Positions 4,331 to 24,490 are shown, counted from the stretch's first letter. The stretch is DNA of 64,000 nucleotides from Octopus bimaculoides (GCF_001194135.2 NC_068981.1:160480654-160544653), one strand, 5' to 3'. The notes: generated by a model not told the origin, from the sequence alone. Numbers and translations are program-made.

Positions 4331-4812
4331 GAGAAAGAAGATTCCAGAGTTAACTTCTTACAATTAACTTCTATATATTAAGTGTCTAAATGTTGTAGAT
4401 AATGTCTAAGTATTGTTGATAAGATCATTTAATTTTCAGACTATTAACAAGAAAATTTTTCTCAGTATTGACATCTAGACTATATTTCAATCTTTGATTG
4501 CCATCACTTTTAAATCTACAAATAGACACCAGAGTTCAAACCAATTAAAACGGAGGTTAGATGTAATTATTGAAAAATCTTTCATCTTCAAAGATGTTGT
4601 TAACGGTTTTCTTTTTTTAATTAATTTACTTAAAAATTAAATAAGAATAATATTGATGGAAAAATTGAGTATTTTTATTTGTGTCAGAGATACCCTAATG
4701 TTTTAATGTATATGTAATTATCAAGTTAAAAAGAATTCTTTTTATTTATAAAAAAAAAAGGTATTGTTTTAAAATTTCAGTAATGTTTCAATATCATTTC
4801 ATTTTATTTCAG

Positions 4813-4938
4813 TCTGTTGTCTGTCCTAGCAGATCACATGAATGCTGAAATTGTCTCAGGAACTGTCAATTCAAAACAAGATGCTATGGATTACATCACT
4901 TGGACATATTTTTTCCGTCGACTTGTAATGAATCCCAG
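4813..4938 (+). CDS. ASCC3: Internal coding exon of ASCC3 (activating signal cointegrator 1 complex subunit 3 helicase), C-terminal helicase cassette
   Basis: Flanked by ttttatttcAG and GTAAGT; 126 nt, phase 2/2. Translates to (S)[41 protein letters not shown](S). From memory this matches human ASCC3 [43 protein letters not shown] better than its paralog SNRNP200/Brr2. Confidence 0.93.
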
Positions 4939-6266
4939 GTAAGTAATTATTTTAAACAATTTTTAGTTTCTTTTTAAATTATGAAATACTAGATAATATT
5001 TAGGAAATGTTAAAATTTGATCAAAATTTTTGGCCATGTTTTGTTTTTTGTTTTTGTCTAGCTTAAGCTATTTAACTTCCAGTTTAAATTCTCCATGACA
5101 GATGATCTTTAGTTTATTAGAATTACAGGAGTATATTTCAGTTTAACCTTTTAGCATTTAAACCAGGGTCATTCCATGTCAAATCACCCCTCAGACTCCC
5201 CTAAAAAATATTCATACTAGCTCCTGTACCTATATGATGGAAAAATATCAAGTATTAGATCAATTCCTTTGATGGTTGTGTAATTGTAGGCCTTTATAAT
5301 ATTAATTAATTTTACATTTTTTGGTGAATGAGTCTCTCAGACCAACTTGAGACAGCCATTTTCCCTCTAATATGGCAAGCACAACTTTGAAATCATGTGT
5401 TTGGGGCTAACTTTTTTCTGTAGAGTTCAAATATCTTATCAAATCATGTGTATCTTGTATATTTTTCCATCTACAGGTCTCTGAAAATTGCCAAGAATTA
5501 AACATACAGCAAATGTATGCCTCTTTTAGGTATTTTTATCTCAATAAGTACACTAGATAAAGCAACCACATTATTTTCCCCTGTTATTTAGCATATAGTA
5601 GACCATTTCTGAGCAGTAACCATGTTAGTTACTATTACGGGAGTGTCAGAATAATTTTTTGAAATATGTGTGATTTCAAAATTTCTCAAAAATCGTCCAT
5701 TTTGATGCCCTTGGTTGACCATGTGGCCAGTTCACTATCATTTTTTAAATTTTTCCCATGCATTCTTATATTTCTGAAGATGATGTGACAGAAATTTGGT
5801 TTTGTTGTTGAGCTTCTTTTCAGAGTTGTAAATTTTTAGAAATTCAGTTGTCAGCACTTTGTACACGATCAACTTATTTATAAAGCATGGATATAAAACA
5901 GCATATTATCCATCAGTGGATGTTTATTTATACTATATATATATATGTATAATATTGGTTTCAAATTTTGGCACAAGGCCAACAATTTTGGGGGAGGGGG
6001 TAAGCCGATTACATCAACCCCAGTACTCAACTGGTACTTATTTTATCAACCTGAAAGGATGGAAGGCAAAGTCGAACTCAAAACATAAAGACGGATGATA
6101 TACCGCTGAACATTTTGCCAAGTGTGCTTACGATTCTGCCTGCTTGGCGCCTAAAACTCGGAGTTTTATCATGGCTACAGAATAATTGTCACATATTATT
6201 TTCAGATAAATTCCTCTATTTACATAATATCAAGGTCTCTTTCTTTTGTTGTCTTACCATTTCTAT

Positions 6267-6297
<31 letters not shown>

Positions 6298-7177
6298 NNN
6301 NNNNNNNNNNNNNNNNNNNNNNNNNNNNNNNNNNNNNNNNNNNNNNNNNNNNNNNNNNNNNNNNNNNNNNNNNNNNNNNNNNNNNNNNNNNNNNNNNNNN
6401 NNNNNNNNNNNNNNNNNNNNNNNNNNNNNNNNNNNNNNNNNNNNNNNNNNNNNNNNNNNNNNNNNNNNNNNNNNNNNNNNNNNNNNNNNNNNNNNNNNNN
6501 NNNNNNNNNNNNNNNNNNNNNNNNNNNNNNNNNNNNNNNNNNNNNNNNNNNNNNNNNNNNNNNNNNNNNNNNNNNNNNNNNNNNNNNNNNNNNNNNNNNN
6601 NNNNNNNNNNNNNNNNNNNNNNNNNNNNNNNNNNNNNNNNNNNNNNNNNNNNNNNNNNNNNNNNNNNNNNNNNNNNNNNNNNNNNNNNNNNNNNNNNNNN
6701 NNNNNNNNNNNNNNNNNNNNNNNNNNNNNNNNNNNNNNNNNNNNNNNNNNNNNNNNNNNNNNNNNNNNNNNNNNNNNNNNNNNNNNNNNNNNNNNNNNNN
6801 NNNNNNNNNNNNNNNNNNNNNNNNNNNNNNNNNNNNNNNNNNNNNNNNNNNNNNNNNNNNNNNNNNNNNNNNNNNNNNNNNNNNNNNNNNNNNNNNNNNN
6901 NNNNNNNNNNNNNNNNNNNNNNNNNNNNNNNNNNNNNNNNNNNNNNNNNNNNNNNNNNNNNNNNNNNNNNNNNNNNNNNNNNNNNNNNNNNNNNNNNNNN
7001 NNNNNNNNNNNNNNNNNNNNNNNNNNNNNNNNNNNNNNNNNNNNNNNNNNNNNNNNNNNNNNNNNNNNNNNNNNNNNNNNNNNNNNNNNNNNNNNNNNNN
7101 NNNNNNNNNNNNNNNNNNNNNNNNNNNNNNNNNNNNNNNNNNNNNNNNNNNNNNNNNNNNNNNNNNNNNNNNNNNNN
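6298..7177. other. Assembly gap (880 N); other gaps at 20202-20578 and 23083-23242
   Basis: N runs, each beginning at a (TA)n microsatellite. Confidence 0.98.
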
Positions 7178-7357
7178 GGTGGCACGGAAAAGCACCGACT
7201 ACACTCTCGGAGTGGTTGGCGTTAGGAAGGGCATCCAGCTGTAGAAACTCTGCCAAATCAGCTTGGTGCCTGGTGTAGCCATCTGGTTTCACCAGTCCTC
7301 AGTCAAATCGTCCAACCAATGCTAGCATGGAAAGCAGACGTTAAACGATGATGATGG
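7178..7357 (+). mobile_element. RTE-type 3' tail (LINE end or SINE sharing that tail)
   Basis: gttggcgttaggaagggcatccagc...gcatggaaagcagacgttaaacgatgatgatg. A similar tail lies at ~17420-17575, and its aagggcatctagctgtagaaaa portion recurs near 30720. Confidence 0.7.
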
Positions 7358-7820: not shown

Positions 7821-10570
7821 CTATATATTTATTGAAAAAGAAATGATTCTCTGATTTTTCTGCTCTCACTAACTAGCATTGTCTACTGTACTAAGCTGGT
7901 CGTTTGGCTTTTCAACACTAGACCGGTTTGCAAATTTTCAGCAACTCCTCAGCTGTTTTTTTCAAGGAGTTAATTAGGAAATTGCTACCGACTTTTAATA
8001 TTTGGTTATAAATAACTTTAAATTATCTCAAAATTCCTTGGACGTAATTTCTCTAAAGGGCAGATAAAAGAAACAGTAGAGAGTTATTGCCCTTAGACAA
8101 AGCAGTCGGTTGCCGAATGAACTAAATTAGATGTAATCTTTATCAAAAATAATTTTATACCATTTATATTTGAATCATTTTAAATATGAAACTAGACTCT
8201 TAATTTCATTTAAAACGATATATGTATATGTTTACATTAGCACACCTTTCTGATTAGCAATTATTGGCACTGCAAGCAGGTATCCTGTTATATTTTAACA
8301 CGAATATCAAAGAATCTTACAGATCAAAATTGACTCTACAAGCCTTTATCTAGAATTCCTGAAAGTTGAATTGAGAGCCAGAAACTAATTTGGTTAATCT
8401 GAGTAACTAAGAATTTAGTATGGCCATTATATATTCAAACAAATTGTGTAAAACTTCATGTATGATAATGTGCTTAAAACATTTGATATTACTTTAAGCA
8501 CTCCAATTGGAGTTTTGATTTTATACAATATTCAATTTGGACTTTTCTGCTCCACCCCCAATTAGTTTCTCATGTTGATGTCATCCAAGCCTACTTTGTA
8601 GCTTCGTACTAGTTCCATCCCTATAGTCTGTATGTTATTCCTTCCAACATCTAAATTATAGTGTTTAAAAAAAAATTTGTCATAGTACATTGCTCGGCTG
8701 AAACTGGCTCTGTAATACAAATGTCTTGTTTGCATAAGTTTTGAATTAAAATCTTCCACCAAACCTTAGTCACAATTTATGTTCCTAAAACTAAGCTGAA
8801 TGATAATTAAGTTATTTTACTAAATTCTTTGTTATATTTAAAATTAATTGAAATAAATACAGTAACAAAAGGGTTAACATTCCTTTACCTGCCTGTGTAA
8901 GACTGCCACCTGTTTTGCAATATATAAAGTGTAAACTGGTGTTAAGTACCGAATTGAATTTTGCTTTGTATATTCCTTCATATGTAACATTCACATCTTG
9001 TTGATGTGGATGTTATGAAAAGCTTCACTTTTCTTTTATTCTTTACGTTACAAAATATAAACATAACAAGAGTAGAAATATTTGGAGAATTTTATTTATA
9101 AAAGTGCAAAAATAGGTATTTTTAAATATGTTCCAGTAATTGATATAAACTAAAAAATAAATAAACTTTACAATTGACAAAAGAAATTCAACTGATTTTT
9201 TTGAAGAGATCCCCAAATATTTGAATCTTAAACATATAATAGTGTGACATGAAGGAAAAAATGAAAAAGATATTAAATATTGCCACTATCCCATCAAATT
9301 GTTTTTTTTTTACAAAAAAAAAAAAATTCTACATAATATTCAGTTTCTTATTAAGTTGTAATCTGAATACAAAATCAAATTCATAAATTAGTACAAAAGT
9401 TTCTAAGAAGAGAAAGTTAGAAAAGGCTAGTAATTGTCACTAGCCTTTTTACCAGTCTTGAAAAGTGTACATTACTTAATAAGGGATGGGGAAATGCAAA
9501 TAAAAAGGGATATGTCCTAGCTGATAAGCCTAAAGCAGCAGAACAGTTGATCAAAGTACTCGTCAATCCCTTAAGCCAAACTCAAGCAGATGATGATATG
9601 AAGTGGAATGCCACTTATGAAGAAATATCACAGATACACAACTGTTAATGGATTTGGGATTGCAGGTTTAGAGGACAGAAATTTTGACAAATAAATCTAA
9701 TTAAGACAAAGAAACGACAATAAAGAGGATGACAAATGTCCAGATACTTGAATACTGTTAGTATTTTGTTTCAAGTTTTCTGTGAATAAAAATGACTAGG
9801 TTCACTCACAAAATTCCACCGCTAATGATAGCTTTTGAAAAAAAGAAAGAAAATGGGGGGGGGAAAAAAAGGGAGAGTTTCAATATTAATGTTCTATTAT
9901 ATACAAGAATGTCTTCTCTATCTCCCATCCGAACCCACAGAAACAGTATACAAAATTTTGGAAAAGAAAAAAAAAAACAGTATAAATACAAACACATTAC
10001 AAAATATAAAATGAATTAGTATAAACATCAAAGAGCAAGAATAAATATAGTTGTATGAAGACAGTTGTTGAACATTCCCCATGCTTGACAGTCCTCATCA
10101 CAACCATGTTGCCTCTTTCATACAGATTTACTGTCATGGAATCTTTGTCATAGCCAACAACTGAAATAAATCCTTGGCTGTCACAGTCAACATCCTTCTG
10201 TATTAAAAATCTGTTTAATGAAAGTATCTTCACCTTCACACCAGCTTTTTGTCAAAGATGTTTTTACCACTTTACACCAACTCAATTCCTTCAGGTCTTT
10301 AACTGCCTGACTCTTTTGTCAGATCAATCATAGTTGTTTCATACCTTCATGGCATGTTAACTACCATTTCGTATCAGCTGAAATTTTTTTTTCATTCATT
10401 CATTCATTCTCAATTGCTTCAGTTTTTCACCAGCAAATTTCCCTTGAAGCCAGTTCATTTTTTCCATGTTATCTTACATGTCCAACAGATCCAAGGCATT
10501 TATTACAGTTTGATATTTCAAAGTTCATTACTTGGCCATATAAATAGCCTATGTGCCATATTTTTCAGTC

Positions 10571-10681
10571 TTAAATTTCTATATTTGATAGATTGCTAAG
10601 AGTTTGATTATGGCTTGCATTCTTTCGATCCTGATTTTGTACAATGAAATTGCTGTAGACTTTTTGTCGTTTCTTTTTAAT
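10571..10681 (-). CDS. Nested gene coding exon 6: cytoplasmic tail and stop
   Basis: ctttttattttcAG| phase 0, IKKKRQKVYSNFIVQNQDRKNASHNQTLSNLSNIEI*. The basic cluster follows the TM directly (positive-inside rule). This is the first strong in-phase acceptor I found after exon 5. Confidence 0.75.
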   Translation of the reverse strand: MKKKRQKVYSNFIVQNQDRKNASHNQTLSNLSNIEI

Positions 10682-10949
10682 CTGAAAATAAAAAGTTAAA
10701 AAACATGAACTGGCAGGAAAGAAACGCCACTGATACATACAAATACTCTTACAGTACTAGTTTTGTTTCCTTCATAAACAAATCCATCTTAGAGTGGTGT
10801 GGTAGTTAGTTTCTTATATAAACATACTTTTCCATGCTTACATGAATTGTAGAAAATATACATTGGTGTGGGATCACACCCTTGATGGAAATGGCCCAGC
10901 TCAGTATGTAGGAAAAGTGCAGTTAGAAATTATGGGTCATAATTATGCA

Positions 10950-12210
10950 GAGAATATGTGAAGACTAGAAAAAATTAAACTAGGATGCTCCACTGAATGT
11001 GCAATGTCAGTATGCATTTACAACACAATCAAATGTAGTGTTCAAGAAAGAAGACTGTACTGGTATGGTCATGTGATGAGCATGGATGAGGACAGCTCTA
11101 TAAAGAAATGCTGATCAGTAAATGTGGGTGAAACATGAAAAAGAGGGAGAGCAGGAAGACACGGGACAAAAGTAGTGAAGACTGATCTCAAAATGTTGAA
11201 CCTCACAGGAAATGCTTGACAATTTGCTGTTCATCTTATTGAAAGTGAGGCCCTAAAAATCATTGTCTATACATTCACTGGGCCCTATTCTCAGTTTGTC
11301 CCCATCAAGCCTTCCTCATCTTCCTAATACCCATCCATCCATAGCACTGTCCAACTGCTGTAACCGGGTGAGTATAAGCCGCACGTAATTCATCTCTACT
11401 TTGTACTACCAGTTACCTCCCTTCTTCCTGGAACCACTTCCTTTTACAATCCATCCCTCATTCTGAATATCATCTCTTCCCCCCTTCATTTTCCACACCT
11501 CACTTATCTTGCCGTACCTCATCTTATCTGCTATCATTCTCGACACCCTCTCATATTTGCTGTCAACTTACCAACCCCTATAGTCATCTAAATACCCCTG
11601 ACATCCCTCCATGTCACCCCACCTTGCACATCATCTTCCTATTTTGTAATCTATCTACAGGTATAGTTTACTACCACCTTCCACCTCTTTCCTGAACCAC
11701 TATTTTTTTTTACATACTCCATTCACCACCTCTCTCTAACCATCTATTGCTCTCCTTTAATGAACTCATCCACCCACCTTTCCCAATCCTTTGTATTATA
11801 TACAGTGCTTGTATTTTGAGAGTACATTGACACTTCGTCACTTCTTTCCAGCTACTCTTATCTATTGTTATATAATACAGGGCAGCCATGTGTCTCCTCT
11901 ATAGCACTTGGGCCTGTCCCTCTATCATACTTTAACTGCAATACCTGGCATAAAGCAACCTTTCTCTCTACAACCCCATTCAGCTGAGTGGGGGGGGGGT
12001 TGTGTATTACTTGGTGACTTGACTTGTGCCACTGTTACAAAAAAAGCACCCAGTATACTCTATAAAGTGGATGGTATTAAAAAGTGTATCCAGTTGTGGA
12101 AACCATGCCCAAACAGATACTGGAGCTCAGCAGTCTTGACTCACTGGATCCTGTCAAACTACCCAACACATGCCAGCATGGAACACCAACATTAAATGAT
12201 GACGATTTTA
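10950..12210 (+). mobile_element. RTE LINE remnant with a long pyrimidine-rich segment and RTE-type tail, inside the last intron of the nested gene
   Basis: tggtatggtcatgtgatgagcatggatgaggacagc is homologous to the 24.8 kb copy. Tail is ccaacacatgccagcatggaacaccaacattaaatgatgac. Confidence 0.7.
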
Positions 12211-12649
12211 GTGCTTTTCTCTCATTCCTAACAAGACTATTATGTGTGTTGTGTGAACAAAAGTGGATTGAGAGAAACTGCATGGAAGCTCATTGTATAT
12301 ACAATTCGAAAAGGTCTGACTGTCACATTAATTCTACTTGAAAACTTACATCAAGTACATATGGCTGTGGATACTCAGCTACTTACATGTTAATTCAATG
12401 AATGTGGTAGTTCATTTATTCAACAACTAAGTATTGATTTCATATTTTGGCACAAGGCCAGTAATCTCAGAGGAGCAGTTAAGTTGATTACATCGACCCC
12501 AATGCTCAACTGATACTTTATCAACCCCGAAGGGATAAAAGACAAAATACCACTAAGCATTTTGCCTGGTGTGCTGACAATTCTGCCAGCTTGGCACCTT
12601 AAAAACAACTAAAATATTAATGCTTAGAAATTTTGACCAAGATCCATTT

Positions 12650-12692
<43 letters not shown>

Positions 12693-12722
12693 CAACTATT
12701 ACTGATTGAAAAGTATACTTAC

Positions 12723-12802
12723 TTGTATTTTGAATACCAGGAATATAAGGAATGTAATTAAAATAAAGAGAAGTGTGCCTATAACACCAGCTGTTGCAGC
12801 AA
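12723..12802 (-). CDS. Nested gene coding exon 5: transmembrane helix
   Basis: tctttttctttctaacAG|...|GTAAGT, 80 nt, phase 1/0. Translates to (V)AATAGVIGTLLFILITFLIFLVFKIQ. Confidence 0.88.
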
Positions 12803-12967
12803 CTGTTAGAAAGAAAAAGAAAATATAATTAACCCACTGAATTTGAATTCTTTTAATATTATTAATTGCTATTCTACATAAACATTCTTGATATTGATCT
12901 TCAGTGTTCAAACTTTTATTTTATTTTTTTTTTATTAAAAATTTCAAAAAGAAGAATGGATATTTAC

Positions 12968-13159
12968 CGAAAATAACCGAATTGTTTACTTGCGGCTTTG
13001 GATCACTTTGATAGTGTTGATAGTTTTTAACAGTTGGATTTTCTGCTACTTTGGTGTTGCGTTCTGATGCTATTAACTTAGGGCTGACAGGTCTCTCTGT
13101 TGTAGGATATTTTTTAGTTGGTTCTTTTGGAACTGGTGTACTTGCTAGTGGGGGGATAG
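12968..13159 (-). CDS. Nested gene coding exon 4: Pro/Thr/Ser/Lys-rich stalk
   Basis: ttatttcaaatAG|...|GTAAAT, 192 nt, phase 1/1, in frame. Translates to (A)IPPLASTPVPKEPTKKYPTTERPVSPK...NNSVIF. Confidence 0.82.
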
Positions 13160-13296
13160 CTATTTGAAATAAATATATAAAGCTTAATCTTCTAAACAGT
13201 TTTAAAAGCCAATGAAAAATGAAAATATATCTATAGAATATTGTATCGGGCAATTTTTTTTTTCTTTTTTAATATTATAAGAACTTAAAAGCTTAC

Positions 13297-13644
13297 CTTC
13301 GTAATAAAGCCAAAGTCCTTTGCGCTTGCCTGCGCTTGCCATTGTCAGTGTTAAGTTTAACTCGTTTTTAGACGTGGGAAAACTTTTTTCATTTACACTT
13401 CGGTTGCATATTGTTATGGTGTTAACTCCCAAATTCAGAAACAGATAATCTGTACAGTTTTTATTTCGTTCACCTTTTAGATCGAGATCAAGTATATATA
13501 ATTGAATTTTCCTATGAGGTTCCACTCTAATGTTCAAACTGCACGTGAACCGACCTTGAACATTGTTAGGGTAGCGATCACTAGAAATGTATCCACTTTG
13601 ATCAGTGAGCTGTTTGGTGTTACAAATCGTTCTGATTTCAGATC
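13297..13644 (-). CDS. Nested gene coding exon 3: CUB domain
   Basis: ttttttcctcttaaAG|...|GTAAGC, 348 nt, phase 1/1. Contains CxxxxLxxxSGYISSxxYP, C-x3-I, DLDL, CxDYL, C and terminal GLWLYY, with 4 Cys, which is the CUB pattern. Confidence 0.9.
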
Positions 13645-14286
13645 CTTTAAGAGGAAAAAAATAAGATAAAGTTTTAAAAATAATAATTACAGTAAACATA
13701 ACAATTAAGTTACTGCAAATAAATCATTGTTTATATATCCGTCACAAAGAACCAGGCGTTTAATGAAGCGCGATTAAAATTAACACTAATCTATATAGAA
13801 CAGTCCTTAGCTTTGGTAGGATAAATATTCAATAATTATTTCATTTTTTCATAAAGGATCTAATTTGCCTTAATCTGCTAATGCTAAGTTGCTTTCACTC
13901 TTATCAGTCCCAGAAATAAATGTTTTATAGATATATATATATATATATATATATATAAACAAAACATCCCTATTGTTTTCACGTATCCAGAGAAGAGACA
14001 ATGCTAGATTTTATCTCCTTTCCATTATCAGAAAGAAAGAAATGAATAGGTCTCGAATCTGAAGTAACCACGTTCTTATATTTATTATTTCCCATAAATA
14101 CAGACCAACATGCGAGGATTTGAAAACTGCTACGATAGTTAGAATCAATTTCTTAAGTTAGTAGCAATTTAGTGGACAGCTTGTTTTAATTCGATAGCAA
14201 TCGCAACATTGTATCATCAATAATAAATTTAACAAAAGTGATAGCTTATGTGAAAGGATCAGCAATAAAGTATTTATTTTACTCAC

Positions 14287-14562
14287 GCTTTACACATTGG
14301 TATTCCACTTGAAAATAATTGAAGTCACATTTCTTTGTTCTTCGACCAGTTTCTCTCGTGGGTAAGTTAACACGACAGGACTCCCGACCCATGCAAGGGT
14401 AGTTTTGTTCCTCCTCATGTGTACAGTCATTCTCTTCGTAGCTGCAGGCTCCCCTGCTGCTGTGACCATAAAAACTCCTTAAAATGCGAACCATGTAACC
14501 GCTTGGACAAGTGGCGTTCAAAGAGTCCTTTTCGTCTTTAAAACAAGCGCTTACATTCAAAC
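14287..14562 (-). CDS. Nested gene coding exon 2: SUEL/Gal_lectin (rhamnose-binding-lectin-like) domain
   Basis: tttcctAG|...|GTGAGT, 276 nt, phase 1/1. (G)LNVSACFKDEKDSLNATCPSGYMVRILRSFYGHSSRGACSYEENDCTHEEEQNYPCMGRESCRVNLPTRETGRRTKKCDFNYFQVEYQCVK has 8 Cys in SUEL spacing, YG(H) and the terminal YFxVxYxC. Confidence 0.9.
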
Positions 14563-14875
14563 CTAGGAAATAATATTGGGTTTTATTTTGGTTGTGAAAG
14601 AGACGGCATTGTTACTTTTAAGAAGATCGAAATTAAATATTTGATTATAAACAGAGGTTAAAAATATGAAATTTTGTTTAGATTCTTATATCAGTAGAAG
14701 CTTAATGCAAAGCATTATATATATATATTTATAGATAAATAAAAATAATAAAAAAATATGAAGTGCAGCTGTCCCAAGCAGCTTTAATAAGAATTTAAGA
14801 AATAATTTTTCCTTTATGCCTGTGTGTGTGTACGAAATTTTTAAAAAATATATTTGCAATGCATAAACAACTCAC

Positions 14876-14951
14876 CTGCTACAAGATGACAGATATCAAA
14901 ATAAAGAAACACTGGAAACAGCACAATTGCCCAGCTAAATAATCTTGCCAT
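14876..14951 (-). CDS. Nested SUEL-CUB membrane protein gene, coding exon 1 (signal peptide); the exon including 12 nt of 5'UTR spans 14876-14963
   Basis: Minus strand reads ttttcctttcctgcAG|taattagcaatcATG GCA AGA...GTA GCA G|GTGAGT. Gives MARLFSWAIVLFPVFLYFDICHLVA plus 1 nt (phase 1), a hydrophobic N-terminus. Confidence 0.85.
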
Positions 14952-15177
14952 GATTGCTAATTACTGCAGGAAAGGAAAAATAAAACAGAAAAAAAGGGAA
15001 GATTTTTTGAAAAATAATAATAACTCAATCCATTATTGAAACGCATCAGTCTCAATAATAGAGAAACAACAAGTACAAAGGGAAACTGCAAGTACAAAGA
15101 AAGAGAAGCTGGTGTAATAATAATAGTTAGCTATGTCTCACAGCTGGACTGACGAGAGCTAGTACTATAGAACGTAC

Positions 15178-15208
15178 CTGGAACCGTTGTTCATATATAA
15201 TACACCTG
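15178..15208 (-). other. Candidate 5'UTR micro-exon of the nested gene
   Basis: Minus strand tataattttcAG|cAG|gtgtattatatatgaacaacggttccag|GTACGT: tandem (NAGNAG) acceptor and a good donor, ~210 nt upstream of coding exon 1. Based on motifs only. Confidence 0.3.
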
Positions 15209-16009
15209 CTGAAAATTATATGTATCCTTTATATATCGGCTGAATTTCCCTCCAAAATATAGAAAGTCTACAAATATGAAACTAAATTCTCTAAGACTGC
15301 GACTTGCATAGAGTCAGGTTTCTGGAGCGTCGGCTTCTGGGGACAAAGAGCAGGAAGTGTACCATATGTGAGTGCTTAAGGGGGTTTAGAATATGTATCT
15401 TCGTAGAAAGAAGTTCATTGTGTTCAAATGTAAACAAAGTATTTTCATTGACTAATTACTCATCAAAGACACCACGTTATTTACACTGACGACCGTCACT
15501 CTCTCTGCTAGCAGGTGCCATCATACTATAGAAGGCAGGCTATTTCTGTTGATATCTCTCCTTCCTCTACCTCACAGTCTTCTCGTGCAGCTTGAGTTGA
15601 TAGTGTGACCCGACATATGTTCGAGTTTGTTGCTTTCTTTCTGTTTAGACTCAACCATTACTACTAAAAGGGGATTTCTTATGCTCCCATCCCTCAACTG
15701 AAGCTTTCTAGTACTGTGGATGCTGAAATTCCAGCATTTCCATTGTTGAGACAAAATATATAAATAAAAAAGCAAAGCATTGAATATCATTACAGTATGA
15801 AAACGCATTTATATTTACATAGCATTAAAATAATTTTTTTTTTAATTAAATTATTTGTAAAAATTATTTTAGTCGCATGTACCTTGATGTAATCACCAAA
15901 TTTTGCAAAAGTGAGATAAGATAAATGTTTAAATCGGTTTGATAACTGAAAATTAGCAATATATTACAAATTGTTTTTATTCGTTAGCAACAGAGGGATT
16001 TTTTAAAAT

Positions 16010-16620
16010 CTACCTCGCTACGATTGCCTACCTACCCGCCAGTAGAAAAATGGAATAGCTCTAGAAATTGTTCTTCCACCTGTCAGGCTGATTACTACGT
16101 ATCATTGTTATGGAAATGAACGGTTTATACAGGTATTGTGTCGTCTCGCAGCGGTTGAATGATTAGTGAGTCTTTGGGGTCAGGAAGCAGTCAATGCAGA
16201 CGCCTGAAGTCGACAGCCTGCCACACTTTAGGTTGAAGTGGTGTGGATAGGGGTAGTAGAAAAACAGAAAACCTTTTCTTTATCGGGCAACACCTGTCTT
16301 TCTAGTTGACAAACAATGAGCCTATCCCGACCTCGAGCGAGCAGGCGCGTGTCTGGCCTTACTTATCAACGATGAAGAAAGAAAGAAAAACGATCTTGTC
16401 TTTTTCATAAGTAAAGCCACTTGAGAAAGAAGACAAAAATGGAAGTGGAAGGGAGGGATTAGCGACCCTGGCGGGAAGTTAAGAGAATATTAAGACAGTG
16501 GCGTACGCCTGGCTGTAAGCCGCCACGTGCCAAGCTTACGACCTACTAGAACAAAATTTTCTCTAATCTTTCAATTTCTGTCGTTTCAAATGTCACCAAA
16601 TCCGTCATTGGATTCAACTA
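16010..16620 (-). promoter_or_regulatory. CpG-rich, repeat-free segment upstream of the nested gene; candidate promoter or 5' exon region
   Basis: Visibly more GC- and CpG-rich than the flanks (cgacctcgagcgagcaggcgcg; ggcgtacgcc; gccgccacgtgcc), with several minus-strand donor-like sites. No transcript data. Confidence 0.3.
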
Positions 16621-17929
16621 TTTGCGAGACTGACAAAATGTTGAAATTATATGCAAACACGTGTATATATTTTACGCTGCAAAAATGTTTATAATCACAT
16701 AGTTATACTATTTTGGTTCAATGAAATTGGTAGTTTTTCCTAGATAAAATATATGTAACGCCAGGAACAAAGAAGTGTCTTCAATATGACGAGAGCAACA
16801 GACGGTTTCACATATACACACACACACACTGGGGCACCGCCTTGAAGAATTTTTAGTAGAATGAATCGACCCCAATATTTTTTAAAAGCCTGGCACTTAT
16901 TATTGAGACTGTGCATTTGTTTAGTCTTTTATTTCGGTCATTGGATTGCGGCCATCCTGGAGCACCACCTCCACGGGTTTTAGTCGAATAAATCAACCCC
17001 AGTGCTTCTTTGTCTTTTTCAGTCTGGTAATTATTCTATTGGTATATTTTGCCGAACTGCTAAGTCACTGGCTCTTATACAAACCAACACTGGTTGTCAA
17101 ACTGTGAGGGGTGGGGGACAAACATAGACACAAAGACACACACACACATTGGTTAGTCAGAGTTAAGACTTCATATCTATAGGGCTTAAATAGGAAAAGT
17201 GGACTTCAAATATACCACACTTGGAATACTTAAAAGTTACCATGCCACCCATCTATTTACCTTGTCAACTGCTGTTGAACAAAGAAAACAGTTTCTAGAT
17301 TAGCCTTGAAATACATAGCACTTGTTGACTTCACAAGTGAGTGGTATATAAATGACCAGGAAGGGATAACTGAAACTCTATCACAAAGAAATAACTGCCC
17401 CCTAATCACTTTACAGAATGTAGTGGGTACATTCTGTGCAGTGATTAGCGTTAGGCAGGGCAACCAGCCCGAGAAACCATACCACAACAGACAATTGGAG
17501 CCTCGACTAGCTCCTGTCAAACCGTCCAACCCATGCCAGCATGAAAAACGGACATTAAATGTTGATGATGATAGATATGTAACTGGATGAATATTGACTC
17601 TCCTGAGTTCATCTGCCTTTTGATAGGTCTTATTTTTCATTCCACAGAATTGTCCAAAAGCCACCCTACTCACCAAGCTGGTTTGGTGATGTTACTGGCT
17701 GAGTCATAGATGACCTGACCATGCAACAGGTTCTACTGGGGGGTTACATGTTACCAGTAACCCTCAAGAGTGACTTCACACACACACCTTGTGTGTGTAG
17801 TTAGATATATGACTATTACTGTTGAGTTTAGTTCCACACAGATTATCATCATCCAGTCTGCCTCCAGTAAAGTGGTTTGGATACTACTATACTTAGTATT
17901 ACTGGTTATGATACACAGAGCAAATGTAG

Positions 17930-17961
<32 letters not shown>

Positions 17962-17979
17962 GTATAATATATATATATC

Positions 17980-18385
17980 AGCCATTTCACTATGTTGAAC
18001 CATTAATTTCTACACATTTTTTCTCTCTCCGTTTTTTGTTTTTTTTTTTCTCCTTTCTGTCGAAGAGTGTAGGCTTGAAACAAAAGACTTTTGCATTCTT
18101 CCCAAGCATTAAACAAATATACCTGCTTGTTGTTCCTACACCTGTCTTCATCTTTTGTTTTCCATAAATTTGAACTATATGTATGTATGCGCCATGATAG
18201 ATCACTAGCCGCTACACATTCTTTATTTTCTCTCCATTTCTTTCTGTGTTCATTTCTTTCGAAGAGCGTAGGCTCGAAACGTTAAAGACTTTCTCACTTC
18301 CCAAGCGTTAAACTAATACATCTGTTTGTTGTCTACACCACCTGTCTTCATCTTCTGTTTTTTTTTGTGAATTCTCCCTATATTT
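17980..18385 (+). repeat. Two tandem copies of a ~190-bp repeat containing gaagagcgtaggctcgaaac; third copy at ~37005-37195
   Basis: Direct comparison of the three copies: each has cctgtcttcatct and (tttc)...gaagag.gtaggct.gaaac...aaagac. Confidence 0.8.
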
Positions 18386-19299
18386 ATATATATGTATATA
18401 TATATATGTACATGTATGTATATATGTGTATATATATGTAATATATATTTGTGTGTATATATGTATATGTATATATTTATGTATATATATATGTGTGTGT
18501 GTTTGTATACATAGATATATATATGTATATATCAGTGACGACTCCAGCACTCGGGCTGTTAGGGCTTAGCCTGAGTTTAAATTTAGTAAAGTGAACATGC
18601 ATTTGCAAGCCGATTTAATTTCTGCCAACACTGACTTCAAGTATGTAATTGTAGACAATAACCCAGGCTCCTTTTATTGAGTCTGATCACAGTTCATTTA
18701 TTTTCCTTCAGCATCTGGTGGTCGTCTTAGAGGTGCCCTGTGTCAAAAAATATCATTCGTAGCAGATGTTCTCTCGACATCGCTCACACGTGTCTGACTC
18801 AGGCTCAGAAGTTACAGCCCGAGTTGTTATCTATAATCATAAAGATTAAAAGTAATTCAAACTCAGTGTTTTCTTGAAATAATATTTTTCTATAAAGATT
18901 AGGATTTAAATTCCAATCTATGAAAAGTTTCCATTCTACAATATTCTTAATTATCCAGCAACTTGGGCTAATACGAACGAGTCTAGTTGGTGAAAAGGAC
19001 TAACTGACATCTCTTCTCAAGAGTACAGGCGACAGATTACTAATGTTTGTTGTGCACTCTGCTTTCATTATTTGATTGCTGTTATTCTGTGCATCTGTGT
19101 GTAAAGATGAGTTGTGTTTTGTATGGTTGCCTTATTTTTACCCTTAACTTAGAAATGGAAAAAGACATATTGCTGGATATAAAAAATAAGCCATTTGGGG
19201 CTAGAAATATTGCAGAAAAACGTGAGGCATTCTTTTATTAAAAGCAGCAAACTTGCTTACTGTTAAATTATCTGTGCATATGTAAGTCTACGGTGTGCA

Positions 19300-19725: not shown

Positions 19726-20609
19726 ATGTTCGATAATATAATAATACAAATGATATATGAACATATGCATGTATACATACATATATGTACATACCTACAT
19801 CTACATGTATATATAGATGCATATCCGGGTACAGGACATCAGAAAAGTGAACGGGGACATAAAAAACAAAAACGATACATACATACATATACAAACATGT
19901 ATATAAATGTATATTGAAAGTAACTGAAATTGAAACCATATAATAGTGAAAGTATTAATAGAAATGTTACTGTTTCACTTTTGTCACATAATACAAAAAC
20001 AGTGTAAGAGATAAGAGATTGCTCCAGGCTCGCATTAAGCAAGAAGTTGGAAATTTTTCTGCCCATGACACTGCATGGACCCTAAGTAAGGCATGAGTAA
20101 AATTTGAATGAGATCCATTGGGTAGTTCTCGAGTTTTAGTGATGCATACGTACAGACAGACACACATTCTCAGTTTTATATATATATATATATATATATA
20201 TNNNNNNNNNNNNNNNNNNNNNNNNNNNNNNNNNNNNNNNNNNNNNNNNNNNNNNNNNNNNNNNNNNNNNNNNNNNNNNNNNNNNNNNNNNNNNNNNNNN
20301 NNNNNNNNNNNNNNNNNNNNNNNNNNNNNNNNNNNNNNNNNNNNNNNNNNNNNNNNNNNNNNNNNNNNNNNNNNNNNNNNNNNNNNNNNNNNNNNNNNNN
20401 NNNNNNNNNNNNNNNNNNNNNNNNNNNNNNNNNNNNNNNNNNNNNNNNNNNNNNNNNNNNNNNNNNNNNNNNNNNNNNNNNNNNNNNNNNNNNNNNNNNN
20501 NNNNNNNNNNNNNNNNNNNNNNNNNNNNNNNNNNNNNNNNNNNNNNNNNNNNNNNNNNNNNNNNNNNNNNNNNNNNNNTCTCTCCCTCTCTCTCTCTCTC
20601 TCTCTCTCC

Positions 20610-20643: not shown

Positions 20644-21702
20644 GTAATTTTGGAGTTGTAGTTGTTTGGCAAGTGGCTTGATCTGAGGTTGTGTGTTGGA
20701 AAAGAAGCAATTACATCATGGAAGAGTCATTTTAGTCATTTAAGAACAGAAAAACTGTGTTACATTTACATTTCATTAATTCCTTAATAGCCAGTCTATT
20801 ATGAGGTGTATTGAAATATTTTGCCACACTCATTCAGCTTAGTCACTGATAGCATTCCAGATGCCATAGAACTGTGTCAATGACCAGGTCGCAGAAGTGC
20901 ACTTTGTAATAAACTTTACAAAATAAACAAAGAGTAAATTTAATAGTTTCTGTGTGTTCTTCCATGGTTAGGAATTACTTTCCCACAATGTAGTTGTTTA
21001 TATATATACACATACACAATAAGTATATGAGGATAAATTATCCAAGCAGGTACCATAAGAGCTCTCTATTGCAGTCCAGGTTCTAGCTAACTGCACCAAG
21101 TAGTAAGAAGCACCAAGGATCGCTTAGGGTGAACAATCCCACTGTATTTCTTCTGATAGTGCATTATAAATATTTTCAGGAGTATAAATCCAAAACAATT
21201 ACAAAGGAAAGTGACGGGGGGGGGGGGATGTTGAAACTTGATATGGCTATAAAATTTGCTTTGTATCTGACCCCATGTTAGCCTTAGTTCCAGGACAAAA
21301 CTGAGGGTTTTATACACTAAATTAGGTCAAAGTATATCTTAGTGTTTTAATACAACTTCATCTATGTATTAAAAGATATTAATTAAAAATTAATTTAATC
21401 AATTGAAGGAATTGTCATATACTTAAGATGTCCATATGAAAGGTGATTTTGACATTCCTCGTTGACTTTGATTGGTTGCTCTGTACATTTGAAGACCTGT
21501 GAAATCTAAAACTCCCTTCCTGGAAAAAACAGGTGAGGTTTGACGACAGGAAGAGCACCCACCCGTAAAATCTGACCTCAAAATCTGTTCCCATCAAAGC
21601 CATGTTAGCATAGAAAACAAAAACTGACAAATGAACAAGTGGGGGGAGGGGGGAGAAAAAAAACAGTAAGAATGGGAAGTCCTTGTGCATAGGAGACGGC
21701 TG

Positions 21703-22104
21703 CAGGAGTGGCTGTGTGGTAAGTAGCTTGCTTACCAACCACATGGTCCTGGGTTCAGTCTCACTGCGTGGCACCTTGGGCAAGTGTCTTCTACTATAGC
21801 CTCGGGCCGGTCAAAGCCTTGTGAGTGGATTTGGTAGACGGAAACTGAAAGAAGCCCGTCGTATATATGTATATATATATGTATGTGTTTGTGTGTCTGT
21901 GTTTGCCCCCCCCCCCCAACATCGCTTGACAACCGATAGTGGTGTGTTTACGTCCCCGTAACTTAGCGGTTCGGCAAAAGAGACCAATAGAATAAGTACT
22001 AGGCTTCCAAAAAATAAGTCCTGGGGTCGATTTGCTCGACTAAAAGGCGTTGCTCCAGCATGGCCGCAGTCAAATGACTGAAACAAGTAAAAGAGTAAAA
22101 GAGT
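21703..22104 (+). mobile_element. Full-length tRNA-derived SINE, family A (A/B boxes, CORE-like centre, internal TA/TG microsatellite, aaagagt tail); apparently young copy
   Basis: A box tggctgtgtggt, B box gggttcagtc, CORE-like ccttgggcaagtgtctt, tail aagtaaaagagtaaaagag; many CpGs retained. Confidence 0.85.
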
Positions 22105-22842
22105 ATGTCGATTATGCTTAGTGGCATAAACAACAAAACAAGAGTATCAATGCATTGCAGATCAACACCAACTTACAGCCTGTTGTTTTCTTCAGATGGA
22201 GATGACACAGGAGCATAATAAACAAAGGAAATCTGAAACTCAGGCATGTGTATAATACTAATAACTGAAATGTGCAGGTAGATTGATGGAAGCACTTGTA
22301 TTCCAAAGCTATATTGTAATAGTGAAGCAATACACTGATGGCATATTCTGAAGAAACAAAAGTTCTGATGTTTTTATTTGGCAGTGTTTTCTATAGGCAC
22401 ATAAAAGAAGGGTCTAAAATATGAAGGACTTAGCGACAATGTGAAACACAAGGATGGCAGTGATTAGTGTTTCCAGAATAGGTGCAATGTTGTGCAGTTG
22501 TAGCTAAAGCCACAATGTGTTACCTGGTTGAGATTGGACTTAAAACAGGGAGCAGAGTAGTGATTCACAAACTGCAGATGGAAGCAGAAAATGATACACC
22601 ATGAATATAGCAGAGGTATATAATAAGGGTGAAGATTAAGAGAGCAAAGTAAATCCTCAACAAACATGCTTAGTGTAGTTACAGCTCGTTTGGTATGTGG
22701 CTGTATGGAGACTAGGGTAAAAGCAAAAAAAAAAATGTACTAGAGTGTGAGACAGACATTCATTGATAACATCATTGCTACTCAGCACTATAAAGGAAGC
22801 AGAATTGTTAGATGGTGTTGAAATAATTTCAATCTCTGTAGA

Positions 22843-23050
22843 ACTCTTTACTTTTTTACTTGTTTCAGTCATTTGACTGTGGCCATGCTGGAGCACCGCC
22901 TTTAGTTGAGCAAATTGACCCCAGGACTTATTCTTTGGAAGCCTAGTACTTATTCTATCGGTCTCTTTTGCCGAACCGCTAAGTTATGGGGACGTAAACA
23001 CACCAGCATCGATTGTCAAGCGATGTTTGGGGGACAAACACAGACACACA

Positions 23051-23082
<32 letters not shown>

Positions 23083-23422
23083 NNNNNNNNNNNNNNNNNN
23101 NNNNNNNNNNNNNNNNNNNNNNNNNNNNNNNNNNNNNNNNNNNNNNNNNNNNNNNNNNNNNNNNNNNNNNNNNNNNNNNNNNNNNNNNNNNNNNNNNNNN
23201 NNNNNNNNNNNNNNNNNNNNNNNNNNNNNNNNNNNNNNNNNNTATATACATATATATATATACAACGGGCTTCTTTCAGTTTTCCGTCTACCAAATCCAC
23301 TCACAAGGCTTTGGTCGGCCCAAGGCTATAGTAGAAGACACTTGCCCAAGGTGCCACGCAGTGAAACTGAACCCAGAACCATGTGGTTGGTAAGCAAGCT
23401 ACTTACCACACAGCCACTCCTG
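22843..23422 (-). mobile_element. Full-length family A SINE in reverse orientation; its internal microsatellite contains a gap
   Basis: Reverse complement is nearly identical to 21703-22104. Confidence 0.85.
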
Positions 23423-24224
23423 TGCAAGTTTTATGCAAAACAGTTTTGTGTTAATGGCTAAAGTCTGGATGAGATGATTCATTTTCTGTATACTTTGAGT
23501 CTCTTGTCCAGGATGCCACTGTCTCCAATGCTTTGGCTGGCATCAATATATTGGAAGCTGTCTGAATAGTTAACACAGGCAAAATGCTTTACAGCATTTC
23601 TTTCATCTTTACGTACTGAGTTCAAATTCTGCCAAGGTTGACTTTGCCTTTCCTTCATTCTCTCGGAGTCAATAAAATAAGTACCAGTTAAACACTGGGG
23701 TCGATGTAATCAGCTGATTCACTCCCCCCAAATTACTGGCCTTGTTCCAAAATTTGAAATCAATATATTGGAAGCTGCGATCCATCAATCCAAACATCTA
23801 TTCATCCATCCAACCATTTATCCATCAGGTAGTACAGTGAGGTCTGTGGCTGGCAAGTGGTGCAAATACACAGCACTATTAGGCATGTACTACTTTGAAC
23901 CAGTGGTAATAGAAACATTTAGGTTTGTTGATAAATCAATGGATGATTTCATCAATACTATTGGGTGGTGAGGGGCAATGATAGCTGAGGTGACATGTGA
24001 AGTAACCTCTACTTCATGGGTGTGGCAACAAATTAATCTTGTGAGTGTTTGTGGCAATATTTTCTGCGTGTCAGTTTGGTGCTTGGGTATTGATATTCTC
24101 CCTTCCACACATGCACACACACACACACTCCTTGTTTGTTTGTAAATAAATAAAAAAAACTTATCAAATTTGTGTGTGTGGCAAATGTGCAGGTACAATA
24201 AGCACTAAAAATGCGCAGACAGTA

Positions 24225-24490
24225 GACTCCCTCAAATGCTCAGGGAGGATCACTAGACGTAGTAGATAACTTCTGTTACCTAGGAGACCAAGTTAGCAGT
24301 AGTGGGGGAAGTTCTAAAAGTGTAGTTACTAGAATAAGAATGGCTGGCCAAAGTTCAGAGAGCTCCTGCCTTTGTTGGTAACTAAGGGCCTCTCTCTCTC
24401 TCTCTCCCCCTCCCTCTCTCTGTCTCTCTCTCTCCCTCCCTCTCTCTGTCTCTCTCTCTCTCTCTTTCCCTCTCTCTGTCTCTCTCTCTT

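What the first reader, a model, noticed from the sequence alone, without database searches (positions are those of the whole stretch)
10571..14963. Complete SUEL-CUB-TM receptor-like gene nested antisense inside an ASCC3 intron
Seen: six GT-AG exons on the minus strand join into an uninterrupted 1083-nt CDS (360 aa: signal peptide, 8-Cys SUEL-like domain, 4-Cys CUB, stalk, TM, 36-aa tail). The introns are 313, 642, 137, 165 and 2041 nt, and the gene lies downstream of a + strand ASCC3 exon. The ORF track shows only fragments of it. Established: SUEL domains occur in rhamnose-binding lectins, EVA-1 and latrophilin, and CUB domains mediate extracellular recognition. Inference: this is a functional, probably uncharacterised cell-surface receptor or adhesion protein transcribed against its housekeeping host. 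I cannot tell whether it is already annotated.
Basis: partly seen in the sequence, partly recalled or inferred. Interest (0 to 1): 0.75.

Follow-up and report, generated by a model that had tools for sequence, protein, structure and literature searches.

The report
Conserved receptor-like gene nested inside ASCC3
A real, already annotated but unstudied octopus gene for a small cell-surface protein sits backwards inside an intron of the helicase gene ASCC3, and chitons, limpets and a ribbon worm keep it in the same intron, so the arrangement is over half a billion years old.

Summary
Six minus-strand GT-AG exons join into a 1083-nt CDS. Its 360-aa product is identical to NCBI's "uncharacterized protein LOC106884421" of Octopus bimaculoides, so the gene is annotated but uncharacterised.

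The protein has a signal peptide, an 8-Cys SUEL/RBL-like domain, a 4-Cys CUB domain, a Pro/Thr/Ser-rich stalk, one TM helix and a 36-aa tail. Both domains are confirmed by profile search and by predicted fold.

Nesting is confirmed. The + strand exon 4813-4938 encodes the ASCC3 second-cassette winged-helix domain. About 435 ASCC3 residues are still to come, and the annotated ASCC3 gene spans the locus.

The gene is under purifying selection (dN/dS 0.11 against Argonauta). Its exon plan is shared by full-length homologues in molluscs, a brachiopod, an annelid and a nemertean.

New here: the gene lies antisense in the same ASCC3 intron in Argonauta, a chiton and the nemertean Tubulanus. A limpet is consistent with this.

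The SUEL-like domain lacks the Glu and Lys needed for rhamnose/galactose binding. A protein-binding co-receptor or adhesion role is therefore likelier than a lectin role.

The parts
14876..14963 (-). First coding exon. It starts at an AG acceptor (AG at 14964-14965), has 12 nt of 5' UTR, the ATG at 14951, and encodes the signal peptide (residues 1-25 plus one base). Phase-1 donor GT at 14875-14874.
14287..14562 (-). Exon 2, 276 nt, phase 1-1. Encodes the whole 8-Cys SUEL/RBL-like domain (residues 26-118).
13297..13644 (-). Exon 3, 348 nt, phase 1-1. Encodes the whole 4-Cys CUB domain (residues ~118-234).
12968..13159 (-). Exon 4, 192 nt. Encodes the Pro/Thr/Ser-rich disordered stalk (residues ~235-298).
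12723..12802 (-). Exon 5, 80 nt. Encodes the transmembrane helix, with the conserved motif AAxxGV(I/V)GTLxFIL.
10571..10681 (-). Exon 6, 111 nt. Encodes the 36-aa cytoplasmic tail ending in -NIEI, plus the TAA stop.
10499..10504 (-). AATAAA, about 67 nt after the stop codon. Candidate polyadenylation signal; not verified.
4813..4938 (+). Host-gene exon: ASCC3 second-cassette winged-helix domain (...[41 protein letters not shown]). It has an AG acceptor and a GTAAGT donor. The host intron begins at 4939 and runs past the end of the window.
16046..16591 (-). A 550-nt non-coding block, 72% identical to Argonauta, lying 1.1-1.6 kb upstream of the ATG and containing CACGTG. It may be the promoter and/or the non-coding first exon of the nested gene. 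This is inference only.
9088..10059 (-). Three short blocks conserved with Argonauta downstream of the stop codon (9088-9156, 9683-9853, 9979-10059). They may be a long 3' UTR or regulatory sequence. Not verified.

Best explanation
SHOWN. Window 10571-14963 (minus strand) holds the complete coding sequence of an intact, selectively constrained gene, O. bimaculoides LOC106884421. It lies antisense inside the ASCC3 intron that follows the second-cassette winged-helix exon. It encodes a 360-aa type-I membrane protein built one module per exon: signal peptide, SUEL/RBL-like domain, CUB domain, mucin-like stalk, TM helix, short tail. It belongs to a spiralian family of 350-390-aa proteins with the same exon plan. 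Its position in this particular ASCC3 intron is shared by cephalopods, a chiton and a nemertean, and a limpet is consistent. The nesting therefore predates the mollusc-nemertean split.

INFERRED, mechanism. The protein sits on the cell surface and uses its RBL-like and CUB domains as protein-binding modules rather than sugar-binding ones. It acts as an adhesion molecule or co-receptor. The tail has no enzymatic domain, so any signal must pass through a partner. The partner would be contacted through the ectodomain, through the unusually conserved small-residue TM helix, or through the C-terminal hydrophobic-X-hydrophobic end.

INFERRED, transcription. The gene is transcribed from its own promoter inside the host intron, probably the conserved block about 1.1-1.6 kb upstream.
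For: - Gene model: identical to the annotated protein.
- Host gene: the annotated ASCC3 range spans the locus on the opposite strand. Exon 4813-4938 matches human ASCC3 at residues 1331-1371 of 1806 with 88.9 bits, against 64 bits for Brr2.
- Selection: dN/dS against Argonauta is 0.11 overall and 0.05-0.19 in every region.
- Exon plan: conserved in 9 species.
- Family: a search of 1.84 billion representatives gave 311 hits. Full-length homologues come from Solemya, Sinanodonta, Potamilus, Patella, Liolophura, Lingula, Owenia and Tubulanus.
- Transcription in relatives: the cuttlefish orthologue occurs as an intron-less ORF on a 1.6-kb Logan contig. A 348-aa variant of it (P0185, in the same 90%-identity cluster) occurs on 119 contigs of at most 3.4 kb. 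This indicates a spliced mRNA.
- Same-intron nesting: Argonauta, Liolophura and Tubulanus. The ASCC3 exon ending in ...FFRRLVMNP lies 1-5 kb beyond the gene's 3' end in all five species. In Tubulanus the next exon, SYYNL..., lies on the other side of the gene.
- Domains: CUB E=3.7e-10, fold TM 0.80-0.84. RBL profile 3e-16 to SUL-I plus latrophilin Lec domains, fold TM 0.54-0.61.
- Not a lectin: the residue after the first Cys is Phe33, and is F, Y or L throughout the family. The loop-2 Lys is Asn107, and is N or T throughout the family. Vakonakis et al. 2008 showed that even E42D, E42Q and K120R abolish rhamnose and galactose binding in the latrophilin-1 RBL domain (PMC2430599).
- TM helix: nearly invariant, with dN/dS 0.05.
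Against: - No O. bimaculoides RNA reads could be examined. The five junctions rest on the NCBI model, splice consensus and conservation.
- The downstream ASCC3 exon is not in the window. In this species, nesting therefore rests on the annotated gene range and on the fact that about 435 ASCC3 residues remain to be encoded.
- Within 10-kb flanks the gene is not inside ASCC3 in Owenia or Lingula, where it sits beside paralogues. It is not inside any annotated ASCC3 in Solemya or Sinanodonta either.
- The function is entirely inferred. No partner, tissue or phenotype is known.
- A non-canonical sugar site cannot be excluded.
- The CUB Ca2+-site Asp that several other family members keep is Ala in cephalopods.
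Confidence: 0.6

Rival explanations
1. It is a membrane-bound carbohydrate-recognition receptor, a true rhamnose/galactose-binding lectin. It would work for example in innate immune recognition or in egg-sperm or cell-glycan adhesion, like SUEL, CSL3 or SUL-I.
For: The N-terminal domain is homologous to bona fide lectins: SUL-I 3e-16 and CSL3 1.6e-5. It has the RBL fold. The Tyr-Gly of the YGR motif is invariant.
Against: The Glu at +1 of the first Cys and the loop-2 Lys are both required for binding (PMC2430599). They are replaced in every family member aligned, by F/Y/L and N/T respectively. The DPC motif and the buried Arg of YGR are also not kept. There is only one RBL domain, whereas soluble RBLs gain avidity from tandem repeats.
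Confidence: 0.12
2. It is an auxiliary subunit of an ion channel or ionotropic receptor. It would work like the single-pass CUB proteins NETO1/2, SOL-1/SOL-2 and LEV-10, or the CUB-domain Nav-beta proteins reported from Lymnaea, tuning trafficking or gating through ectodomain and TM contacts.
For: The layout is a single-pass CUB protein with a short, enzyme-free tail and a very conserved TM helix. Foldseek lists Neto2 in a GluK2 complex (7f59_E) among the CUB matches. A Lingula paralogue was auto-named 'neuropilin and tolloid-like protein 2'. CUB proteins as Nav-beta subunits in a snail are described in PMC6259924.
Against: There is no LDLa domain, unlike NETO and LEV-10. The Lymnaea Nav-beta proteins were reported to have no homologues outside pulmonate snails, whereas this family is pan-spiralian. 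No expression or interaction data exist. The resemblance is architectural only.
Confidence: 0.2
3. It is a gene-prediction artefact or a decaying pseudogene that happens to keep an open frame inside a long ASCC3 intron.
For: No O. bimaculoides reads were examined here. The intron is full of repeats and transposon debris.
Against: The CDS is intact, with six canonical splice-site pairs. dN/dS is 0.11 at dS of about 1.2. The exon plan is the same in nine species of five phyla. Cuttlefish orthologues occur as intron-less mRNA contigs, one variant on 119 contigs.
Confidence: 0.02

Closest known systems
Latrophilin (ADGRL1-3, C. elegans LAT-1) Lec/RBL domain
   Same: Same 8-Cys SUEL/RBL fold on the outside of a membrane receptor. 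In the solved complexes among the hits (teneurin-2, FLRT/Unc5, TOL-1) the Lec domain binds proteins. Receptor RBL domains often lack the sugar-binding Glu or Lys (PMC2430599).
   Different: Latrophilins are 7TM adhesion GPCRs with olfactomedin, HormR and GAIN domains. This protein is single-pass, pairs the RBL domain with a CUB domain, and has a 36-aa tail.
EVA-1 / EVA1C (SLT-1/Slit co-receptor)
   Same: A type-I single-pass protein whose ectodomain is built from RBL domains lacking the sugar-binding residues, and which acts as a co-receptor (PMC2430599).
   Different: EVA-1 has two RBL domains and no CUB domain. No sequence match to EVA-1 was sought or seen here.
Single-pass CUB proteins that serve as co-receptors or auxiliary subunits: neuropilins, NETO1/2, SOL-1/2, LEV-10, Lymnaea Nav-beta
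   Same: A CUB ectodomain, one TM helix and a short non-catalytic tail. CUB fold matches include neuropilin a1/a2 and Neto2. The roles of these proteins are summarised in PMC6259924.
   Different: No LDLa, FV/VIII or MAM domains. Only one CUB domain. An N-terminal RBL domain instead. The Ca2+-site Asp is missing in cephalopods.
Soluble rhamnose-binding lectins (SUEL, SUL-I, CSL3)
   Same: These are the best sequence and fold matches for residues 27-117. The cysteine pattern is the same.
   Different: They are secreted tandem-repeat lectins with ANYGR, DPC and KYL motifs. Here only the YG is kept, and the Glu and Lys ligands are replaced.
Evolutionarily conserved nested genes (for example TIMP inside synapsin; from my own knowledge)
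   Same: A small gene on the opposite strand inside one particular intron of a larger host gene, kept in place across phyla.
   Different: The gene pair is different. This pair was not found in the literature searched.

Membership tests
SUEL/RBL lectin domain (Pfam PF02140) | Scores above the Pfam gathering threshold | tested here: not met
   P0001 scores 24.9 bits against a cut-off of 31.4, E=2.7e-5. Twelve of 13 family members match at E<=0.01, best 4.8e-9.
SUEL/RBL lectin domain (Pfam PF02140) | Eight cysteines in the conserved pattern, and homology to solved RBL domains | tested here: met
   C32, C44, C65, C72, C82, C88, C104 and C115 are invariant or nearly so. Family profile against the PDB: SUL-I 3e-16, CSL3 1.6e-5, ADGRL2 Lec 3.2e-5, Lphn1 1e-3.
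SUEL/RBL lectin domain (Pfam PF02140) | RBL fold | tested here: met
   The AF2 domain model has pLDDT 88. Foldseek ranks 1-12 are all RBL/Lec domains, with TM 0.54-0.61 and probability 0.98-1.00. The TM-scores are moderate, so the loops diverge.
Functional rhamnose/galactose-binding lectin | Glu at +1 of the first Cys and Lys of the KYL loop, both required for sugar binding | tested here: not met
   The residues are Phe33 and Asn107, and F/Y/L and N/T across the family. The requirement comes from PMC2430599.
CUB domain (Pfam PF00431) | Above the gathering threshold, four-Cys pattern, CUB beta-sandwich fold | tested here: met
   40.5 bits against a cut-off of 21.4, covering profile positions 1-110 of 110. 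C125, C152, C181 and C197 are invariant. TM 0.80-0.84 at rmsd 2.1-2.8 A to C1r CUB2, MASP-1 CUB2 and TSG-6.
Ca2+-binding CUB subtype | Acidic triad (Glu/Asp, Asp, Asp) that holds Ca2+ and contacts ligand | tested here: inconclusive
   D170 and D183 align with the first two ligands of C1r CUB2. The third position is Ala in cephalopods but Asp in several other family members. This was judged from alignments only.
Nested intronic gene | Whole gene lies within one intron of a host gene, on the opposite strand | tested here: met
   The upstream host exon is at 4813-4938 on the + strand. The annotated 2172-aa ASCC3 range covers the locus and more than 10 kb on each side. The downstream host exon lies beyond the window. 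Both flanking exons were seen directly in Tubulanus.
Nested intronic gene | Independent transcript with its own promoter and poly(A) site | not testable with these tools
There are only hints: an acceptor 12 nt before the ATG, a conserved upstream block at 16046-16591, and AATAAA at 10504-10499.
NETO/LEV-10-type auxiliary subunits | CUB domain(s) plus an LDLa domain plus a TM helix, and physical association with a channel | tested here: not met
   No LDLa match in Pfam. Association with a channel is not testable here.
EVA-1/EVA1C | Two tandem RBL domains followed by a TM helix | tested here: not met
   There is one RBL domain followed by a CUB domain.

The most novel reading that the evidence does not exclude
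The pairing of ASCC3 with its antisense intronic SUEL-CUB gene is not just inherited. It is actively maintained because the two genes are functionally coupled, through shared cis-regulation or through transcriptional interference within this one intron. The encoded protein founds a spiralian-specific family of partner-dependent co-receptors or channel auxiliary subunits that has never been studied. The age of the arrangement (the mollusc-nemertean ancestor) is already well supported here. The coupling and the receptor role are not.
Probability: 0.2. Interest if true: 0.6.

Novelty: new member of a known kind. Interest (0 to 1): 0.4.

Why it matters
For genome annotation, the finding is a confirmation.

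Two points add biological interest.

1. This is a named-by-nobody family of small SUEL-CUB membrane proteins. It is conserved across molluscs, brachiopods, annelids and nemerteans, so it is a candidate lophotrochozoan cell-recognition or co-receptor molecule.

2. Its position, antisense in one specific ASCC3 intron, has been kept since before the mollusc-nemertean split. Such deeply conserved nested pairs are few. They are useful both as rare genomic characters and as test cases for whether nesting imposes regulatory coupling.

Neither point overturns anything known.

Tried and rejected
No junction could be tested, and I tried no other route.
- ASCC3 protein retrieval: a homology search with the 42-aa ASCC3 exon peptide returned only short fragments, not the full octopus ASCC3. 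That search was largely wasted.
- Downstream host exons: I used the human ASCC3 C-terminal sequence, recalled from memory, as a probe only. It matched the WH exon in the window and mapped the whole 3' part of ASCC3 in Tubulanus, so the probe is adequate. Neither it nor the Tubulanus exon peptides found a second ASCC3 exon in window 14964-64000. The host intron is therefore longer than 59 kb.
- Other species: the isoform proteins P0003 and P0028 were not on record. Lingula, Owenia, Solemya and Sinanodonta show no ASCC3 within 10-kb flanks. For the two large-genome bivalves this is uninformative.
- Rfam: no family matched in the whole window.
- Pfam on five other long ORFs in the window: nothing.
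- Literature: no paper was found on LOC106884421, ASCC3 nested genes, ASCC3 microsynteny or SUEL+CUB transmembrane proteins.
- Mapping artefact: my splice mapper added 5-nt terminal micro-exons in some loci. These are artefacts and are ignored.
- Rejected readings: pseudogene or prediction artefact, and a true rhamnose-binding lectin. Reasons are given under the rival explanations.


Full report
**1. The observation**

I read window 10300-15300 on the minus strand and joined the six stated exons in a script.

| Exon | Coordinates | Length (nt) |
|---|---|---|
| 1 | 14951-14876 | 76 |
| 2 | 14562-14287 | 276 |
| 3 | 13644-13297 | 348 |
| 4 | 13159-12968 | 192 |
| 5 | 12802-12723 | 80 |
| 6 | 10681-10571 | 111 |

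- Every exon is bounded by AG...GT(A/G)AG.
- The sum is 1083 nt, and the translation is an uninterrupted 360 aa plus TAA.
The coding sequence is complete, but a non-coding 5' exon almost certainly lies further upstream.

**2. Already annotated**

- The 360-aa product is 100% identical over its full length to NCBI 'uncharacterized protein LOC106884421 [Octopus bimaculoides]'. UniRef calls it 'CUB domain-containing protein'.
- Window 571-24951 is base-for-base the reverse complement of GCA_001194135.2 CM046601.1 160481224-160505604.
Nothing in the searched literature mentions it.

**3. The protein**

- Hydropathy gives an N-terminal signal-like segment and one TM segment at about residues 293-327, followed by a 36-aa tail.
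- Pfam gives CUB at residues 125-232, E=3.7e-10, 40.5 bits against a cut-off of 21.4. It gives SUEL_Lectin at residues 43-115, E=2.7e-5, 24.9 bits, below the 31.4-bit cut-off.
- To settle the N-terminal domain I built a family alignment (A1) and a domain alignment (A2). The A2 profile hits only RBL domains in the PDB: SUL-I 3e-16, CSL3 1.6e-5, ADGRL2 Lec 3.2e-5, latrophilin-1 1e-3, ADGRL3, CSL2 and C. elegans LAT-1.
- AlphaFold2 on the domain gives pLDDT 88. Foldseek ranks 1-12 are all RBL/Lec domains, with TM 0.54-0.61.
- The full-length model has pLDDT 71. The stalk (residues 242-298) and the tail end are disordered, and there is one long helix at residues 296-344. Its CUB domain superposes on C1r CUB2, MASP-1 CUB2 and TSG-6 CUB at TM 0.80-0.84, rmsd 2.1-2.8 A.
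- Each module is one exon. The signal-peptide, RBL, CUB and stalk exons all end in phase 1.

**4. A lectin fold without the lectin site**

- Vakonakis et al. 2008 (PMC2430599) showed that rhamnose or galactose binding by an RBL domain needs two residues: the Glu directly after the first Cys, and the loop-2 Lys of the 'KYL' motif. E42D, E42Q and K120R all abolish binding.
- The same paper notes that receptor-borne RBLs (EVA-1, PKD1L2, C. elegans LAT-1) often lack these residues.
- In this protein the two positions are Phe33 and Asn107. Across the 13-sequence family they are F/Y/L and N/T.
- The DPC motif and the buried Arg of 'YGR' are also not kept. Only Y57-G58 are invariant.
- I therefore infer a protein-binding role for this domain. 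The latrophilin Lec-teneurin and LAT-1-TOL-1 complexes that appear among the fold hits are examples of such a role.

**5. Real gene under constraint**

- The Argonauta hians orthologue (P0002, 75% identical) maps to six exons of 61, 276, 348, 189, 80 and 114 nt, with the same phases.
- Nei-Gojobori dN/dS between O. bimaculoides and Argonauta is 0.113 (dN 0.139, dS 1.23). dS is near saturation, so the ratio is approximate but clearly far below 1.
- By region: RBL 0.08, CUB 0.12, stalk 0.12, TM 0.05, tail 0.19.
- O. sinensis has isoforms of 330 and 301 aa.
- The decapodiform orthologue (47% identical) is an uninterrupted ORF on a 1615-nt Logan contig, ERR12374249. Its 90%-identity cluster contains Sepia (Acanthosepion) pharaonis CAE1301431. 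That cluster also contains a 348-aa variant (P0185) seen on 119 contigs of at most 3.4 kb.
- All genomic copies have five or more introns. These intron-less contigs are therefore spliced mRNAs.

**6. The family**

- An exhaustive HMMER search of 1.84 billion representatives gave 311 hits at E<=1e-3, 93 at E<=1e-10 and 16 at E<=1e-30.
- The full-length hits of 350-390 aa come from these species:
  - bivalves Solemya velum, Sinanodonta woodiana and Potamilus streckersoni
  - limpets Patella caerulea and P. vulgata
  - chiton Liolophura sinensis
  - brachiopod Lingula anatina
  - annelid Owenia fusiformis
  - nemertean Tubulanus polymorphus
- All but one are labelled hypothetical, uncharacterized or unnamed; one Patella vulgata isoform is auto-named 'mannan-binding lectin serine protease 2 isoform X2'.
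- More distant hits include a bryozoan protein, multi-repeat rotifer proteins, and paralogues in Lingula and Owenia.
- All of the roughly 25 hits I looked up by name are spiralian; most of the 311 hits were not traced to a species.
- The exon plan (signal peptide, RBL, CUB, stalk, 76-80-nt TM exon, tail) is shared by all nine loci mapped.
- The TM helix (consensus LPFAAIxGGVIGTLxFILxVLLxLL) is strikingly conserved.

**7. Nesting in ASCC3**

- The + strand exon 4813-4938 has a cag| acceptor and a |gtaagt donor. It encodes [41 protein letters not shown].
- Its best PDB match is human ASCC3, chain 8alz_B residues 1331-1371 of 1806, at 88.9 bits. Brr2/SNRNP200 scores 64 bits.
- This is the winged-helix domain of the second helicase cassette. 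About 435 ASCC3 residues, including the second Sec63 unit, must still be encoded downstream.
- The collection's gene table shows a 2172-aa ASCC3 product (ASCC3_N, DEAD, Helicase_C, WHD, Sec63 and more). It lies on the strand opposite the nested gene, and its range runs over both ends of the 24-kb locus.
- I found no further ASCC3 exon in 14964-64000, using either a human C-terminal probe recalled from memory or the Tubulanus exon peptides. The same probes mapped all 3' exons in Tubulanus, so the negative result is meaningful. The host intron exceeds 59 kb.
It is excluded by the annotation and by the position of the exon within the protein.

**8. The same intron in other phyla (new here)**

| Species | Group | Result |
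|---|---|---|
| Argonauta hians | cephalopod | antisense inside a 2170-aa ASCC3 |
| Liolophura sinensis | chiton | antisense inside a 2189-aa ASCC3 |
| Tubulanus polymorphus | nemertean | antisense inside a 2206-aa ASCC3 |
| Patella caerulea | limpet | ASCC3 annotation is fragmented; a 173-aa Helicase_C+WHD fragment lies on the opposite strand 2.5 kb beyond the gene's 3' end |

- tblastn places the ...[12 protein letters not shown] exon 1.2-5.6 kb beyond the 3' end of the nested gene in O. bimaculoides, Argonauta, Patella, Liolophura and Tubulanus.
- In Tubulanus the following exon (SYYNLDSPDHE...) lies on the other side of the gene, at L006 4079, with the gene at 10001-13934.
- Same host, same intron, same orientation in Mollusca and Nemertea means the arrangement was present in their common ancestor. 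From general knowledge, that is older than about 530 My.
- The gene is not nested within 10-kb flanks in Owenia or Lingula, where it sits beside paralogous CUB genes.
- No ASCC3 was seen within 10 kb in Solemya or Sinanodonta. For those large genomes this is uninformative.
- No paper on this pair was found.

**9. How it most likely works**

Shown:
- It is an intact, constrained gene for a type-I membrane glycoprotein candidate.
- It has five ectodomain N-X-S/T sequons in the RBL and CUB domains and one in the stalk.
- The ectodomain is an RBL-like domain plus a CUB domain on a flexible stalk.

Inferred:
- It recognises a protein ligand or partner at the cell surface. Lacking any catalytic tail, it signals or acts through an associated partner.
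- Contact could be made through the conserved TM helix or through the C-terminal hydrophobic-X-hydrophobic end (-IEI in octopods, -FDV in cuttlefish).

Rivals:
- A true sugar-binding receptor: disfavoured by the missing Glu and Lys.
- A NETO/SOL/LEV-10-like or Lymnaea Nav-beta-like channel auxiliary subunit: architectural analogy only. There is no LDLa domain, and the Lymnaea proteins were reported as restricted to pulmonates (PMC6259924).
- An artefact or pseudogene: effectively excluded.

**10. Verdict**

- The gene is already annotated but uncharacterised.
- It is a new member of known kinds: a single-pass RBL/CUB surface protein, and a nested antisense intronic gene.
- The added value is the phylum-spanning conservation of its position in one ASCC3 intron, and the argument that its 'lectin' domain does not bind sugar.
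- Interest is moderate.

Noticed in passing
window 16046-16591 (also 15339-15471 and 15060-15100): Non-coding blocks 72-85% identical between O. bimaculoides and Argonauta lie 0.1-1.6 kb upstream of the nested gene's ATG. This is despite synonymous sites being near saturation (dS of about 1.2). The largest block contains a CACGTG E-box. They may be the promoter or a non-coding first exon.
   Followed up: partly
window 12699-12722 (minus strand; the start of intron 5): Reading through the exon-5 donor gives ...KIQVSILFNQ*. That is exactly the C-terminus of the annotated O. sinensis isoform X2 (301 aa). A tail-less, intron-retaining isoform may therefore be conserved between the two octopuses.
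   Followed up: partly
window 12968-13159 (exon 4, stalk): Both O. sinensis isoforms lack about 30 stalk residues (ASTPVPKEPTKKYPTTERPVSPKLIASERNT) that O. bimaculoides and Argonauta have. This could be a deletion or an alternative internal splice in exon 4.
   Followed up: no
window 10962-11111 (+), 24588-24983 (+): These ORF fragments carry motifs such as ...QERRLYWYGHVMSMDEDSSIKKC and ...ERKLHWFGHVMCMDEDSCVKKC / ...RDRPRKTWDEVMRKDLRMLGL. From memory they resemble the C-terminal tails of retrotransposon ORFs. One lies inside intron 5 of the nested gene. Pfam found no match.
   Followed up: partly
window 6298-7177, 20202-20578, 23083-23242: Three assembly gaps (runs of N), each flanked by (TA/TC)n-type microsatellites. 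Much of the host intron is simple repeats and repeated SINE-like units, for example the copies at about 7210-7356, 17430-17577 and 25143-25279.
   Followed up: no
L006 (Tubulanus polymorphus) 4739-6363 (+) and 16953-18503 (-): In the nemertean, ASCC3 hosts two further annotated genes near the SUEL-CUB gene. One encodes a 245-aa protein with no Pfam hit. The other is a 516-aa Glyco_transf_92 gene.
   Followed up: no
L005 (Owenia) 32773-36504; L007 (Lingula) 21456-24793: In the annelid and the brachiopod the family member is not inside ASCC3 within the flanks held. It lies next to larger paralogous CUB genes (845 aa and 666 aa), which suggests tandem expansion after leaving the host intron.
   Followed up: partly
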